A DNA stretch of 63,589 bases, the filler included, from Octopus bimaculoides (lineage: Eukaryota), in assembly GCF_001194135.2 (NCBI RefSeq). It is 6 parts of 6 records of this genome, joined end to end, with 100 filler letters (N's around TTAATTAATTAA, not from the genome) between each part and the next. Parts side by side here need not be neighbours in the genome. Positions count along the whole stretch, not along the records: positions 12,108 to 26,871 come from NC_069005.1; 5 more parts are not named here. One strand, given 5' to 3'. A model generated the notes under the pieces. That model made no database searches, was not told the DNA's origin, and was given only the letters and a program-made list of their open reading frames with translations. Every line of letters starts with the position of its first letter. Positions within the stretch are counted from its first letter, which is position 1. Shown here piece after piece: positions 13,809-24,019 of the stretch. Position numbers and translations under genes: made by a program.

Positions 13809-13976
13809 ACTGTAAGGGAATGGTTGACGTAAACTTCGTGTTTGATTCTTCTGTCATGGGTTACGAAGAGACACACACTGTTACTACCTTCATCAAGAGT
13901 TCAATCACAGACGAGTATCTTACTAAGAAAAAATTTATGTTTAGTATGATTACTGGAAAATGCCACGCATTAAAAA
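13809..13976 (+). CDS. vWA paralog A, 168-nt exon, N-terminal half of divergent vWA2
   Basis: atttccag|AC TGT ... AAA A|gtaagt; phase 1-1; CKGMVDVNFVFDSSVMGYEETHTVTTFIKSSITDEYLTKKKFMFSMITGKCHALK. Confidence 0.87.
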
Positions 13977-14978
13977 GTAAGTATAAAGCAAACTCGTTAT
14001 TAATGACCTTTAGGGACATCGTATTTCGTTATGAATCCATGATATACTAGAAAGTATATCAAACGCTTTTATAAGTGAATACTGTTTTCTTCTGTGTTAG
14101 CAGTGCAATTACAACACTTGTTAAGGTTATCTCTACAGATTTTGTTTAGAAATTAATCCAGCACTGATTTTGCTACAGAGTTTCGTATCCGAGACGCCTG
14201 ATGTAAACAACAACGATGAGATCGAAAATGTAAAATGGTTAATGGGCGTATATGCCATACTCCAGGAGTTTTTGCTCTTTCATCAGTGCCCATCCAAACT
14301 ATCAATCGTCCACGAACTATATTTAGTGGCCATTTAAGCAATGAGTTCACGCACATACACTCAAACAAACGTACATACATACATATATACATACATACAT
14401 ACATACATATATACATACATACACNNNNNNNNNNNNNNNNNNNNNNNNNNNNNNNNNNNNNNNNNNNNNNNNNNNNNNNNNNNNNNNNNNNNNNNNNNNN
14501 NNNNNNNNNNNNNNNNNNNNNNNNNNNNNNNNNNNNNNNNNNNNNNNNNNNNNNNNNNNNNNNNNNNNNNNNNNNNNNNNNNNNNNNNNNNNNNNNNNNN
14601 NNNNNNNNNNNNNNNNNNNNNNNNNNNNNNNNNNNNNNNNNNNNNNNNNNNNNNNNNNNNNNNNNNNNNNNNNNNNNNNNNNNNNNNNNNNNNNNNNNNN
14701 NNNNNNNNNNNNNNNNNNNNNNNNNNNNNNNNNNNNNNNNNNNNNNNNNNNNNNNNNNNNNNNNNNNNNNNNNNNNNNNNNNNNNNNNNNNNNNNNNNNN
14801 NNNNNNNNNNNNNNNNNNNNNNNNNNNNNNNNNNNNNNNNNNNNNNNNNNNNNNNNNNNNNNNNNNNNNNNNNNNNNNNNNNNNNNNNNNNNNNNNNNNN
14901 NNNNNNNNNNNNNNNNNNNNNNNNNNNNNNNNNNNNNNNNNNNNTATATATACATATAATTTTATGGATTTTTTTCAG

Positions 14979-15350
14979 ATTTCCACTTCAACACCTATCA
15001 AACCAGGACTAAAATACTTGATCACCTCGACATCTTCTACAAAACGTCCATCACAACTCTTTTACGAGAAACTGCAACGATATCTTTTATGAGTAAACAT
15101 GGCGCCCGCAAAGGAGCACGTAAGGTGGCAGTTATTTTCTTGAAAGGAAAACTGAGTGATCCAGAAGGAGTGAAGACAAATGCGAGGTTTCTCCGTCAAA
15201 GCGGCATTGAAGTGTTTGTAATTAAGATGGATAAATTAAATTCGGATAAAACTTTGGCAAGCATTACTGGAGAACGTAATATTTTGGACGCCACCAAGAT
15301 AAGCAGTATGGTGCAACTGAGCCACGAATTCTTAAACCGACTTTGCCACC
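14979..15350 (+). CDS. vWA paralog A, 372-nt exon, C-terminal part of vWA2
   Basis: ttttcag|AT TTC ... CAC C|gtaagt; open frame FHFNTYQTRTKILDHL...[16 protein letters not shown]...FLNRLCH; homologous to 21805-22176. Confidence 0.9.
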
Positions 15351-16194
15351 GTAAGTAAAGAAGTTCAACTATTCACGCACGCACTCAAACACGCACGCCT
15401 AAATACACACACACACACTCACATACACACAGATACACACAAACACATAGATACCGATATGCACACATGTACACGTATACCACTATGTTTGCACAAACGC
15501 ATGCTCCGCCCACGGTCAGTCCTGATGAAGCAGACCTTTCATGGAAGGCGTTCCAACCATGANNNNNNNNNNAATCAAATACCAATCAGGTATCAAGACG
15601 GACAATATTCAATAAATCCCAACAGTTAAACATTGCTGGCCTCGTGCCGGATTAGCATGTTGGACAAAATGATTAAGGGTCATTCTTCCGGCTCTTTACG
15701 CTATGAGTTCAAATTCGGGGTCGGTAAATTAAGCACCAGTTGTGTAGTGAGGTCGATGTGATCGTCTAGTCACATCCCACAAAATTTGAGGCCTCGTGCC
15801 TCCAGTACGAAGGATTATCATCATCATCACCATCATCATCATTCAGATGGTGAAATGGCAGAATCGTTAGCGCCTTGGACAAAATTCCAGGCGGTAATTC
15901 TTTGGCTCTTTACGGTTTGAGTTCAAATACCGTCGAGGGTCAATTAATAAAATGCCAATCAAGTGTTGCGGTCGACATAATTGACTGACCCCCACCCCTA
16001 CACTTTCTGGCCTTTTGCTAAAATTAGAAAGGATTATTGTTGTTGTTGTTGTTGGTCTAATCGTTGATGTTGATGTTAGAGAAGGGAAAATCATTAGTGC
16101 TTCGAACAAAATTTTTGTTATTGAACTTCTCTTTGTTTTTATTTCATTCTTTTTATTTATAAATCTAATTGCTTTTATTTTATTTATTTTTCAG

Positions 16195-16199
16195 GATAA
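16195..16199 (+). CDS. vWA paralog A terminal exon (Arg completion + TAA)
   Basis: atttttcag|GA TAA, homologous to 20510-20514. No upstream vWA1 or signal exon for paralog A is visible in ungapped sequence. Confidence 0.7.
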
Positions 16200-17186
16200 A
16201 ACCCTGGCTCTTCCCCCCGACAAAGACTATGGAATAACGGAATAAACGACTACCTTTTTTAAATCTTCTTCAGAATAACGAATGAATACACGTACCATAT
16301 ACGAATACACGCATATATATAAATACATACACAAACCTTCAAACATGTAATTCTATACACAACGCGAGTGTGTGTGTGTGTGTGTGTGTGTTAATTTTAT
16401 GTTCTAAAAATTCAGTTTTATTAACACCAAACTGAGAAGTTGAATAAAGAGTTAGATGAAACTTAAGATTCGAACGAAAATGAATTTTGTAGCATATGTA
16501 CACACATATACATACATACATACATACATACATACATACATACATACATACATACACACGAGTGAGTGAACAAACAAAAGAAAGTGGAATTGAACACATT
16601 TGGTAAATGTCTCTTATATTTTTTAGTAAGAGTTTGACTTAGTTCCATATGACTTAGAATTTGGTAAGAACATTGGGCGATCCCATCTCTTCAAACACTG
16701 AAAGAAAAGTAGTGAATCGTAAAGAAGTTCAATATGGTTTCCTAGATATGGGGCTTTACGAGTCAGTTCATGTCGTGTCGCATTGATGGTATGGAAGCGA
16801 CAGCAGATATTTTCTTTATTTGTTCGGCGACTCACAAAACGCTTCCATCCTACCATGCAACGTATCAAACGTAATGATTCGACGTCATTGAATACATTAC
16901 ACACACCGACCATCCGGCAATGTGCCAACAGCTCCCAGCCAGCATCCTCTCTCAGCACGTGTGATTAAGAATAAGGAAAAGATCAGGAATTGATGCCATG
17001 ATATCTACACCACGTGACATGAACTGACCAATAGAAGCTCAGAATCTTGAGGTCGTCTCAAATCCATCGATTTTCTTTCGACCTTTGACGAGATGAATTC
17101 GTCTTACGTGTCCACGAAACTTTATCTTATATGGAACTGCATGAAACTGTTATTAGTATCATCGTAAGCAACAGAAGCAGTATTAA

Positions 17187-17443
17187 TATCAAAATGCAAT
17201 ATATATCCCCACTTAGAAGTGGATGCTGTGTTAAAAGAACGCAGAACACCGCGTTATGTACCAAGAGAAAAATTCTCATAAGGACATGTGGTGCATAAAA
17301 GCACGCTTGTTCATAGTGCTAGCGAGAGATAAATTAGACGACAATATGAGAGGTTACGTCATGGTAAATAACACAGCATTCTGTGTTCTAGCGCAATATA
17401 TACAGTTAAGTGGGGATAAGTATTAGCTTTTGGTATTAATATA
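17187..17443. mobile_element. Small MITE-like element with about 35-bp imperfect TIRs
   Basis: TATTAATATCAAAA..ATCCCCACTTA inverted at 17405-17443. Confidence 0.45.
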
Positions 17444-22176: not shown

Positions 22177-22231
22177 CTGAAAAAAACCCCCCATAAAATT
22201 ATATGTATATATTTATATATATATATGTATG

Positions 22232-22285
<54 letters not shown>

Positions 22286-22790
22286 CATATACATACATAT
22301 ACACACAAACACACACACATACATATATATATGTACATGTATGCATGTATGTATGTATGTATGCATGTATGTATGTATGTATGTATGTATGTATGTATGT
22401 TGTGTGTGTTTGAATGTATGTGCGTGAACTCATTGCTTAAATGGCCACTAAATATAGTTCGTGGACGATTGATGGTTTGGATGGGCACTGATGAAAGAGC
22501 AAAAACTCCTGGAATATGGCATATCCGCCCATTAACCATTTTTCATTTTCGATCTCATCGTTGTTGTTTACATCAGGCGTCTCGGATACGAAACGCCGTA
22601 ACAAAATCAGTGCTGGCTTAATTTCTAAACAAAATCTGTAGAGATAACCTTAACAAGTGTTGTAATTGCACTGCTAACACAGAAGAAAACAGTATTGACT
22701 TATAAAGGCATTTGATATACATTTTGTATATCATGGATTCATAACGAAATACGATGTCCCTAAAGGTCACTAATAATGTTTTATACTTAC

Positions 22791-22958
22791 CTTTTAATGC
22801 TCGACACTCTCCAGTGATCAGTCCAAGCTTGAACTTTTTGCTAGCAAGATACTCGTCTGAGATTGAACTGGAGATGAAGGTATTAACATCATGGCTGTCT
22901 TTGTACCCCATACTGGAAGAGTCAAACACGAAGTTTATGTCGACCTTTCCGTTACAAC
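22791..22958 (-). CDS. vWA gene B, second 168-nt exon (copy B), alternative N-terminal half of vWA domain 2
   Basis: ttccag|GT TGT ... AAA G|gtaagt; phase 1-1, open frame CNGKVDINFVFDSSSMGYKDSHDVNTFISSSISDEYLASKKFKLGLITGECRALK. Confidence 0.87.
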
Positions 22959-23851
22959 CTGGAAGTAAAGAAACAGATTTCGTTAAAAAATATTTACCCA
23001 TGTTCAATAATCATATATCTCTATTGTATGGATGTGTGTGTGTGTGTGTGTGTGTATGTGTGGGTGTTTGGTTGTTTGTACGAGTGTACGTGTGTGTGTG
23101 TACGAGTGTGTGTGAATGAGTGTGTATATGGATATGTGTGAGTGTGTTTTACCTGTCTAATAAGTGGCGATAAGTGAGCCGCAATATGGTGAGGGATTAC
23201 TGTATACGTATGTACGTATGTGTGTGTGTGAGTGTGTGTGTGTGTGTGAATACTTATATATATATGTGAAAGTGTGCGGTTTAGTGGTTAGGGTTAATCG
23301 TTTCACTATCGTAAGGTTGTGTGTATGTATGTATGTATGTGTGTATGTGTATGTATGTATGTATGTATGNNNNNNNNNNNNNNNNNNNNNNNNNNNNNNN
23401 NNNNNNNNNNNNNNNNNNNNNNNNNNNNNNNNNNNNNNNNNNNNNNNNNNNNNNNNNNNNNNNNNNNNNGTATGTGCGTGAACTCATTGCTTAAATGGCC
23501 ACTAAATATAGTTCGTGGATGATTGATGGTTTGGATGGGCACTGATGAAAGAGCAAAAACTCCTGGAGTATGGCATATACGCTCATTAACCATTTTACAT
23601 TTTCGATCTCATCGTTGTTGTTTACATCAGGCGTCTCGGATACGAAACTCTGTAGCAAAATCAGTGCTGGCTTAATTTCTAAACAAAATCTGTAGAGATA
23701 ACCTAAACAAGTGTTGTAATTGCACTGGTAACACAGAAGAACACAATATTCACTTATAAAGGCGTTTGATATACATTTTAGTATATCATGGATTCGTAAC
23801 GAAATACAATGTCCCTAAAGGTCATCAATAACGAGTTTGCTTTATACTTAC

Positions 23852-24019
23852 TTTTCGTTGCTTGGCACTTTCCAGTAATCGTTCCAAACCTGAGGTTTTG
23901 CTCAGAAAAATTCTCGTATACGATTGAATCCATGATGAAGGTAGTAACAGTGTTTGTCTCTTCGTAACCCATACTAGAAGAGTCGAACACGAAGTTTATG
24001 TCGACCTTTCCGTTACAAC
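23852..24019 (-). CDS. vWA gene B, 168-nt exon (copy C), N-terminal half of divergent vWA domain 2
   Basis: ttccag|GT TGT ... AAA A|gtaagt; phase 1-1, open frame CNGKVDINFVFDSSSMGYEETNTVTTFIMDSIVYENFSEQNLRFGTITGKCQATK. Confidence 0.85.

What the first reader, a model, noticed from the sequence alone, without database searches (positions are those of the whole stretch)
13809..24019. vWA2 exons are hyper-divergent while their introns are almost identical
Manual alignment of the 168-nt exons gives 35/168 differences (A vs C) and 41/168 (B vs C), with about 22 of 56 residues changed A vs C and only 4 synonymous-only codons. The 372-nt exons differ at 65/372 nt (about 38 amino-acid changes, 11 synonymous-only codons). 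The adjacent about 385-nt intron differs at only about 15 positions (about 4%) A vs C, and 16015-16113 differs from its mirror at about 2 of 100. This inversion of the normal pattern resembles accelerated exon evolution known from snake-venom and conotoxin gene families. Synonymous sites in the 372-nt exon (roughly 13%) also exceed intron divergence, which suggests introns are homogenised by gene conversion while exon variants are protected by selection (inference). Candidate diversifying recognition or adhesion gene family of unknown function.
Basis: partly seen in the sequence, partly recalled or inferred. Interest (0 to 1): 0.85.

Follow-up and report, generated by a model that had tools for sequence, protein, structure and literature searches.

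The report
Gene conversion homogenises octopus vWA introns
Two neighbouring, oppositely oriented octopus genes for small secreted two-vWA-domain proteins keep copying DNA into each other, so their introns are almost identical while the fast-evolving parts of their exons stay different; the pattern is real but of a kind already known.

Summary
The exon-1 copies differ at 35-41 of 168 nt and the exon-2 copies at 65 of 372 nt. The 382-nt intron block beside exon 1 differs at only 14-19 nt. The window is Octopus bimaculoides chromosome CM046625.1. It holds two convergent paralogous genes, each with vWA1, a 12-nt linker and a two-exon vWA2.

Gap-free long-read contigs of both orthologues from O. 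sinensis decide the cause. In the intron block all 24 informative sites group the paralogues by species. In exon 1, 12 of 14 group them by orthology (Fisher p = 3e-8). So the introns, and the conserved core of exon 2, are homogenised by interlocus gene conversion in both species. The variable exon parts escape.

The block is not constrained: it differs by 8-13% between species, against a neutral 10%. Silent exon divergence is 3-8 times the intron value, which excludes recent duplication followed by venom-like acceleration.

The genes are functional. Omega is 0.1-0.6 in the beta-strand core and 0.6-1.55 elsewhere. Amino-acid-changing divergence outside the core is 1.8-3.1 times the neutral rate.

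This is a new example of a known kind (opsin, RNASE1). The tandem C/B exon pair rests on an unverified 100-N gap.

The parts
13809..13976 (+). Gene A, vWA2 exon 1 (168 nt, phase 1-1)
   Evidence: AG|..|GT, open frame, Pfam VWA when joined to exon 2. Groups with the O. sinensis orthologue S1 (15.6% different), not with the paralogues (20.8-24.4%).
13977..14358 (+). Gene A, homogenised intron block running from the exon-1 donor to an (ACAT)n microsatellite
   Evidence: 3.7-4.0% different from the C and B copies and 8.4-11.6% from O. sinensis. Informative sites 24/0/0 for grouping by species. No Rfam hit and no covariation.
14979..15350 (+). Gene A, vWA2 exon 2 (372 nt, phase 1-1)
   Evidence: 17.5% different from B exon 2. 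It is a mosaic of converted and unconverted parts.
15104..15248 (+). Converted core of exon 2 (nt 126-270; beta4-alpha4-beta5). Its mirror is 21907-22051 (-).
   Evidence: A-B divergence falls to 1.7% (15184-15243) while S1-S2 is 22-35% over the same windows. Informative sites 9/0/2 for grouping by species.
13434..13625 (+). Upstream intronic tract converted only in O. bimaculoides. Its mirror is 24207-24396 (-).
   Evidence: 96.8% identical to the mirror. A-C 0-1.7% over 13464-13600, where S1-S2 is 14-20%.
15955..16112 (+). 158-nt tract in the last intron. Its mirror is 20910-21067.
   Evidence: 98.7% identical to the mirror and 89.9% to O. sinensis S1.
16195..16199 (+). Gene A, last coding exon (completes an Arg codon, then TAA)
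   Evidence: Sequence. End of the NCBI 177-aa model.
23852..24019 (-). Minus-strand gene, vWA2 exon 1 copy C
   Evidence: Closest to S2 exon 1 (19.0%). Included in NCBI model P0003.
23470..23851 (-). Intron block after C exon 1; ends at the 100-N gap
22791..22958 (-). Minus-strand gene, vWA2 exon 1 copy B (second tandem copy)
   Evidence: It is a chimera: nt 1-55 differ from C at 3 sites, nt 56-85 are unique, and nt 86-168 form a third lineage. No counterpart in O. sinensis S2.
22416..22790 (-). Intron block after B exon 1. The B intron is gap-free down to exon 2.
21805..22176 (-). Minus-strand gene, vWA2 exon 2
   Evidence: Identical to the corresponding part of NCBI protein P0001.
24618..24629 (-). 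12-nt linker microexon (ATACAGATCAAG; together with the split codons at its two ends it gives H-T-D-Q-G)
   Evidence: Sequence. NCBI model P0003 reads ...ITCEHTDQGCNG.... Pattern match.
25801..26376 (-). Minus-strand gene, vWA1 exon (576 nt, phase 1-1, intact DxSxS motif)
   Evidence: Pfam VWA E = 2e-38. Mosaic, partial concerted evolution.

Best explanation
The piece holds two old paralogous genes lying tail to tail, about 4 kb apart at their 3' ends. Each encodes a small secreted protein: signal peptide, vWA1, a short linker and a two-exon vWA2.

Because the genes form an inverted repeat, they exchange short tracts by interlocus (non-allelic) gene conversion. Tracts that are still similar keep being homogenised within each species. 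These are the intron block after exon 1, other intronic tracts, and the exon parts that encode the conserved beta-sheet core.

The exon parts that encode helices and loops are not homogenised. They keep their orthologous identity and change amino acids quickly.

So the inverted pattern arises because the introns are abnormally similar, not because the exons mutated abnormally fast after a recent duplication.

Shown: the conversion, its tract-like mosaic and its occurrence in two species; that the block is unconstrained; that the genes are maintained as coding sequence.

Inferred: that selection for different, or diversifying, protein surfaces keeps the variable exon parts from being overwritten.
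For: - Identity and synteny. L001 and L003 place the window on O. bimaculoides CM046625.1. O. sinensis long-read contigs L002 (S1) and L004 (S2) are collinear with gene A and with the minus-strand gene respectively.
- Distances. Intron block: 3.7-5.1% between paralogues in O. bimaculoides, 4.9% in O. sinensis, 8.4-12.7% between species. Exon 1: orthologues 15.6 and 19.0%, paralogues 20.8-27.5%.
- Informative sites, given as species / orthology / other. Intron block 24/0/0. Exon 1 2/12/0 (Fisher p = 3e-8). Exon 2 nt 126-270 9/0/2.
- Species-specific tracts. 13464-13600 is 0-1.7% different between A and C but 14-20% between S1 and S2. Downstream of exon 2, S1 and S2 are identical.
- The block is neutral between species. 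Pooled orthologous noncoding divergence is 394/3903 = 0.101. There is no covariation and no Rfam family. The block is single-copy per gene in about 90 kb of held sequence.
- Silent exon divergence greatly exceeds paralogous intron divergence.
- The genes are maintained. The probability of no stop codon under random substitution is 0.003 and 0.0008. Omega in the beta-strand core is 0.13-0.61.
- The same signature is described for red/green opsins and RNASE1 duplicates (PMC3924837).
Against: - Only two species and four genes, so tract borders and orthology of individual exon parts are coarse.
- Exon 2 gives a mixed signal (15/8/6), and S2 sits on a long branch.
- Both O. sinensis copies carry a 1-nt deletion in a coding exon. 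This could be a PacBio error or pseudogenisation.
- Whole-domain omega intervals include 1.
- NG86 pS in the exons (0.21-0.33) exceeds the noncoding divergence even between orthologues. This is not fully explained. Possible causes are method bias, deeper coalescence, or exchange with unseen relatives.
- No transcript evidence was available.
Confidence: 0.78

Rival explanations
1. Recent duplication followed by venom- or conotoxin-like accelerated evolution. The copies would be as young as the introns suggest (about 4%), and positive selection would have driven 17-24% exon change since then.
For: The exon-over-intron contrast is real. Outside the beta core, nonsynonymous divergence exceeds neutral noncoding divergence between orthologues.
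Against: Silent sites are as diverged as replacement sites (dS 0.22-0.57, fourfold sites 0.14-0.16, against intron 0.04). Exon 1 groups by orthology across species (2/12/0), so the exon lineages predate the species split while the intron similarity postdates it. Whole-domain omega is 0.5-1.14.
Confidence: 0.05
2. Gene conversion without selection. Conversion needs near-identical substrate, so segments that once diverged escape it and drift apart, while similar segments stay homogenised. Exons would then be fast only because their surfaces are weakly constrained.
For: Omega outside the core is about 1 when dS is the denominator (0.60-1.55). Conversion enters exons where they are conserved. Unconverted noncoding DNA between the paralogues is also strongly diverged: 16111-16556 against 20601-20145 is 73% identical, with 78 mismatches in a 477-column alignment.
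Against: Nonsynonymous divergence outside the core (0.185 and 0.315) is 1.8-3.1 times the neutral noncoding value of 0.101, more than relaxed constraint alone can give. The same exon parts escape in both species.
Confidence: 0.3
3. The intron block is a constrained functional element (RNA gene, enhancer, splicing or editing element), and that keeps the copies alike.
For: The similarity starts exactly at the splice donor and is seen in all five copies.
Against: The block diverges between species at the neutral rate (8.4-12.7% against 10.1%). Substitutions are shared within species, not across them (24/0/0). The consensus fold has a positive covariation term and many broken pairs. No Rfam family matches in the block.
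Confidence: 0.05
4. Assembly artefact. Collapsed or cross-filled repeats, or haplotypes placed in tandem, in the gap-rich short-read O. bimaculoides assembly make the introns look alike.
For: Several high-identity tracts abut N gaps. The C-B tandem hangs on a 100-N join.
Against: The same contrast (intron 4.9%, exon 1 27.5%) is present in two gap-free long-read contigs of another species. The copies still differ at 14-19 sites. B exon 1 is 24% from C, and its upstream flank is not homologous beyond 23162, which does not fit an allele.
Confidence: 0.04

Closest known systems
Primate red/green opsin genes and colobine RNASE1 duplicates: interlocus gene conversion with a 'peak of divergence' in exons (review PMC3924837)
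   Same: Introns of paralogues cluster by species and exon sequences cluster by orthology. Divergence is high in parts of exons and low in the flanking introns. The copies are closely linked.
   Different: Here the copies are inverted (convergent) rather than in head-to-tail tandem. The diverged parts are long (most helices and loops of a domain) rather than a few tuning sites. The functional difference between the copies is unknown.
MHC class I/II genes with homogenised introns and anciently diverged peptide-binding exons (own knowledge, not tested here)
   Same: Exon diversity is older than the flanking intron diversity, and the exons are mosaic, patchwork-like.
   Different: In MHC the contrast is mainly among alleles under balancing selection. 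Here it is between two loci, and no population data are available.
Accelerated evolution of snake-venom PLA2 and conotoxin genes
   Same: Exons are more diverged than introns. The products are secreted, with replacement changes concentrated outside the structural core.
   Different: Those cases rest on dN clearly above dS with low dS. Here dS is as high as dN, and the low intron divergence comes from conversion.
Mytilus proximal thread matrix protein 1 (PDB 4cn8) and the N-terminal vWA arrays of collagen VI alpha-3 (PDB 9han_C)
   Same: Best solved-structure matches (E = 4e-40 and 2e-74). PTMP1 is also a small secreted protein built of two vWA domains. About 400-470-aa two-vWA relatives exist in O. 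sinensis, O. vulgaris, Argonauta, Lottia and Owenia.
   Different: No collagen triple-helix region is seen. vWA2 lacks the last Ser of the metal-binding DxSxS motif (it reads DSSxM). Collagen binding was not tested. The closest relatives outside this gene pair share only 39% identity.
Mutually exclusive tandem exons (arthropod Dscam type)
   Same: C and B exon 1 are tandem, both 168 nt, in the same phase, homologous, and both have intact splice sites.
   Different: Only two copies, absent from the O. sinensis orthologue, no transcript evidence, and the arrangement spans an unverified gap.

Membership tests
von Willebrand factor type A domain (Pfam PF00092) | Profile match above the curated cut-off over the whole domain | tested here: met
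   vWA2 built from A, B or C+B2: 58-71 bits against a cut-off of 23.8. vWA1: 132.7 bits.
von Willebrand factor type A domain (Pfam PF00092) | Metal-ion-dependent adhesion site motif DxSxS | tested here: inconclusive
   vWA1 has DGSAS (intact). vWA2 has DSSSM or DSSVM, so the last Ser is replaced (sequences). Many vWA domains lack the motif.
Collagen VI / XII chains (the names given by NCBI) | Gly-X-Y triple-helical region | tested here: not met
   The gene models consist only of a signal peptide, vWA domains and a linker. No Gly-X-Y reading frame appears among the ORFs of the piece. The name reflects vWA similarity only.
Two-vWA secreted matrix proteins (PTMP1-like) | Signal peptide followed by two vWA domains, about 400-470 aa | tested here: met
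   Phase-compatible exons vWA1 - linker - vWA2. Signal peptide in P0005 and P0006. PTMP1 match over two stretches. The full spliced product is inferred, not observed.
Two-vWA secreted matrix proteins (PTMP1-like) | Collagen or matrix binding | not testable with these tools
   Needs a biochemical assay.
Concerted evolution by interlocus gene conversion with islands of divergence | Some segments are more similar between paralogues within a species than between orthologues | tested here: met
   Intron block 24/0/0. Exon 2 nt 126-270 9/0/2. Distances.
Concerted evolution by interlocus gene conversion with islands of divergence | Other segments of the same genes are more similar between orthologues than between paralogues | tested here: met
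   Exon 1 2/12/0. The difference from the intron has Fisher p = 3e-8.
Concerted evolution by interlocus gene conversion with islands of divergence | The islands are maintained by selection | tested here: inconclusive
   pN outside the core is 1.8-3.1 times the neutral noncoding value, but dS-based omega intervals include 1.
Accelerated evolution of venom or toxin type | dN significantly above dS, with dS no higher than intron divergence | tested here: not met
   Omega 0.5-1.14 for the whole domain. dS 0.22-0.57 against paralogous intron divergence of 0.04.
Mutually exclusive tandem exons | Tandem homologous exons of equal length and phase with intact splice sites | tested here: met
   C 23852-24019 and B 22791-22958. 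The arrangement spans a 100-N gap.
Mutually exclusive tandem exons | Transcripts that contain one exon or the other, never both | not testable with these tools
   No transcript-derived protein of these genes was returned by the two protein searches. The NCBI models do not join C to B or to exon 2.

The most novel reading that the evidence does not exclude
The minus-strand gene may carry two alternative versions of the first half of its vWA2 domain. C and B exon 1 are 24% different, equal in length and phase, and both splice-competent. If they are used in a mutually exclusive way, one gene would yield two recognition variants. Together with surface residues that change faster than neutral DNA in both species, the pair would then be a small cephalopod diversifying recognition or adhesion system.
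Probability: 0.07. Interest if true: 0.65.

Novelty: new member of a known kind. Interest (0 to 1): 0.36.

Why it matters
It is a clean, cross-species case of partial concerted evolution in a cephalopod. Intron and exon of the same gene give opposite trees. Annotation and phylogenetics of duplicated octopus genes must allow for this, because intron-based or whole-gene trees would date the duplication wrongly.

It also flags a lineage-restricted pair of secreted two-vWA proteins as candidates for diversifying selection. Their beta-sheet core is conserved, while their helices and loops change faster than neutral DNA. Their function (matrix, adhesion, immunity or reproduction) is unknown. The mechanism itself is textbook, so the value lies in the example and the gene family, not in a new principle.

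Tried and rejected
- Rfam scan of the piece: only microsatellite look-alikes of miRNA families, all below their gathering scores, and nothing in the intron block.
- tRNA scan: none.
- Consensus RNA fold of the five intron blocks: covariation term positive and many broken pairs, so no structured RNA.
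- Dispersed-repeat idea for the intron block: it occurs once per gene unit in about 90 kb of held sequence. Genome-wide copy number could not be checked, because no octopus genome is searchable with these tools.
- AlphaFold model of the B vWA2 domain from a 6-row alignment: mean pLDDT 39.8. It was too poor for a fold search or for solvent accessibility. I therefore assigned the six vWA beta strands from the fold pattern and from alignment with vWA1. This partition is my own assignment.
- Literature search for the locus names: no paper.
- An early BLAST mixed two loci held in one file. It was redone per locus.
- An upstream 'exon' at 13508-13619 was considered because of a GT after ...GACAG. 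I rejected it because the only frame compatible with phase 1 contains a stop (read from the sequence).

Full report
WHAT IS THERE

The usable piece (12108-26871) is AT-rich eukaryotic DNA with many microsatellites and six N gaps, five of them inside the finding's range. NCBI protein P0001 is identical to the product of the B exons. It places the window on Octopus bimaculoides chromosome CM046625.1, assembly GCA_001194135.2. Loci L001 and L003 are the same region.

The piece holds two paralogous genes lying tail to tail.
- Gene A runs on the + strand. Its vWA1 exon lies beyond the left-hand gap (protein P0005).
- The second gene runs on the - strand.
- Each gene consists of a signal peptide, a single-exon vWA1, a short linker, a vWA2 split into a 168-nt and a 372-nt exon, and a last exon that adds one Arg and the stop codon.
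- The vWA1 exon of the minus-strand gene is 25801-26376, and its 12-nt linker microexon is 24618-24629.
- All domain exons are phase 1-1.
- The minus-strand gene carries two tandem copies of exon 1, named C and B, but only one exon 2.
- Pfam confirms the vWA domains.

The closest solved structures are the vWA arrays of collagen VI alpha-3 and the two-vWA mussel protein PTMP1. The NCBI names ('collagen alpha-4(VI)', 'collagen alpha-1(XII)-like') reflect vWA similarity only, since no Gly-X-Y region is present. Relatives of 400-470 aa with two vWA domains occur in other octopods, gastropods and an annelid. The best outside this gene pair is 39% identical.

THE OBSERVATION

- Exon 1 differs at 35/168 (A-C), 41/168 (A-B) and 41/168 (B-C).
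- Exon 2 differs at 65/372.
- Synonymous-only codons number 4, 9, 5 and 11.
- The 382-nt intron block after exon 1 differs at 14-19 positions, or 3.7-5.1%.
- The 158-nt tract 15955-16112 differs from its mirror at 2 positions.
- Exon against intron is significant at p = 1e-9 to 6e-12.

None of the assembly gaps lies in an exon.
- The gaps in gene A are bridged collinearly by a gap-free O. sinensis contig.
- The B intron is gap-free.
- The gap after B exon 2 has a size matching the equivalent 588 nt of gene A.
- The 100-N gap between the C and B units lies in a (CATA)n run and cannot be checked.

THE DECISIVE COMPARISON

The protein searches returned the two orthologues from the long-read O. 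sinensis assembly. S1 lies on contig L002 and is collinear with gene A and its unique flanks. S2 lies on contig L004 and is collinear with the minus-strand gene. Both contigs contain no N.

Distances:
- Intron block: paralogues within a species differ by 3.7-5.1% (O. bimaculoides) and 4.9% (O. sinensis). Any pair from different species differs by 8.4-12.7%.
- Exon 1: the opposite. Orthologues differ by 15.6% (A-S1) and 19.0% (C-S2). Paralogues differ by 20.8% (A-C) and 27.5% (S1-S2).

Parsimony-informative sites in the quartet, given as species / orthology / other:
- Intron block: 24 / 0 / 0.
- Exon 1: 2 / 12 / 0. The contrast with the intron has Fisher p = 3e-8.

This is the classical signature of concerted evolution by interlocus gene conversion confined to part of a gene. 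It has occurred in both species since they split. It also rules out a short-read assembly artefact as the cause.

THE MOSAIC

Conversion is tract-like and does not follow exon borders exactly.
- In O. bimaculoides, 13464-13600 is 0-1.7% different from its mirror, while the same stretch differs by 14-20% between S1 and S2.
- In O. sinensis, a tract downstream of exon 2 is identical between S1 and S2.
- Inside exon 2, the part encoding the conserved beta4-alpha4-beta5 core (nt 126-270) is converted in O. bimaculoides. Divergence falls to 1.7% and the sites are 9/0/2. The 5' and 3' parts remain 20-32% different.
- Exon 1 nt 56-85 differ at one site between A and C.
- B exon 1 is a chimera. Its first 55 nt match C with 3 differences, its middle is unique, and its 3' half is a third, deep lineage.
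- vWA1 shows the same partial homogenisation.
- Where the paralogues are not converted in noncoding DNA, they are only 73% identical with many indels (16111-16556 against 20601-20145).

So the exons are not unusually diverged for copies of this age. It is the introns that are unusually similar.

IS THE INTRON BLOCK FUNCTIONAL?

It does not need to be.
- Its between-species divergence (8.4-12.7%) equals the pooled orthologous noncoding divergence at this locus (394/3903 = 0.101).
- No Rfam family matches it.
- The consensus fold of the five copies has no covariation support.
- It is single-copy per gene in the sequence held.

HOW THE EXONS EVOLVE

- Pairwise Nei-Gojobori estimates for vWA2 give dS 0.23-0.44, dN 0.17-0.36 and omega 0.5-1.14. 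Most bootstrap intervals include 1.
- Fourfold-site divergence is 0.11-0.21 for all pairs.
- Silent divergence between the O. bimaculoides paralogues is therefore 3-8 times the divergence of the intron block. This excludes recent duplication followed by venom-like acceleration as the reason for the contrast.
- The genes are nevertheless maintained. Random substitution at the observed level leaves no stop codon in only 0.3% and 0.08% of simulations. The exons have no indels in O. bimaculoides.
- I assigned the six vWA beta strands myself, from the fold pattern. With that partition, omega in the core is 0.13-0.61 and in the remaining 136 codons 0.60-1.55.
- Measured against neutral noncoding DNA rather than exon silent sites, nonsynonymous divergence outside the core is 0.185 (A-S1) and 0.315 (C/B-S2), against 0.101. 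That is 1.8-3.1 times neutral (z about 3.7 and 8).

This supports positive or diversifying selection on helices and loops. It depends on the exon parts compared being truly orthologous. NG86 pS in the exons is also above the noncoding value, which I cannot fully explain.

MECHANISM AND RIVALS

Most likely (about 0.78): two old inverted paralogues undergo recurrent short-tract gene conversion. Similar tracts stay homogenised. The variable exon parts escape and keep diverging.

Why they escape is not settled.
- Selection against overwriting functionally distinct or diversifying surfaces is favoured by the excess over the neutral rate and by the same parts escaping in both species.
- A passive, identity-dependent barrier to conversion combined with weak constraint is not excluded (about 0.3).

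A constrained intronic element, a recent duplication with acceleration, and an assembly artefact are each contradicted by the cross-species data (0.05 or less each). The exception is the C-B tandem itself, where an artefact remains possible.

COMPARISON WITH WHAT IS KNOWN

The pattern matches that reviewed for primate red/green opsins and colobine RNASE1 duplicates. There too, introns cluster by species, exons cluster by orthology, and there is a peak of divergence in exons (PMC3924837). From my own knowledge it also resembles MHC intron homogenisation. It is therefore a new member of a known kind.

The differences are the convergent inverted arrangement, the large fraction of the domain that escapes, and the extra exon-1 copy.

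LIMITS

- Four genes from two species, with pairwise methods only.
- No expression data.
- Each O. sinensis copy has one 1-nt deletion that may be a sequencing error.
- The structure model was too poor to use.
- The genomic arrangement of S1 and S2 relative to each other is unknown.

Noticed in passing
window 13100-13208: The stretch just left of the point where homology with the mirror copy breaks is only 1.7-4.7% different from O. sinensis S1. That is far below the neutral 10%. It is also present in S2. In the minus-strand gene the linker microexon sits at the equivalent place instead. It may be a transposon fragment.
   Followed up: no
window 25580-25810 (-): An 8-nt-period minisatellite (TTCTTATA-like, about 28 units) starts right after the donor of the vWA1 exon. 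A similar octamer run follows the vWA1 exon in gene A and in both O. sinensis genes.
   Followed up: partly
L002 about 9253 and L004 about 19050: Each O. sinensis orthologue has a single 1-nt deletion in a coding exon: vWA2 exon 1 of S1, and an A-run in vWA1 of S2. This is either a PacBio indel error or the start of pseudogenisation.
   Followed up: partly
window 13820-16199 (+) and 20510-26356 (-): NCBI splits each two-vWA gene into two models. P0003 reads from C exon 1 through into the intron. P0001 starts at an internal Met of B exon 1. Neither a vWA1-to-exon-2 nor a C-to-B junction is annotated.
   Followed up: partly
window 15620-15845 and 15867-16070: Two adjacent SINE-like elements lie in the last intron of gene A. 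No tRNA-like gene was detected in them. The first is also present in both O. sinensis loci.
   Followed up: partly
window 16111-16556 vs 20145-20601; 17700-17882 vs 20023-20210: The inverted homology continues at low identity (73% and 85%) almost to the centre of the spacer. So the whole 3' halves of the two genes form one large degenerate palindrome around a 678-N gap.
   Followed up: partly
window 22185-22420, 12650-12860 and others: Long (ACAT)n, (AT)n and (CA)n microsatellites flank every homogenised tract and most assembly gaps. They give spurious sub-threshold Rfam miRNA hits.
   Followed up: yes
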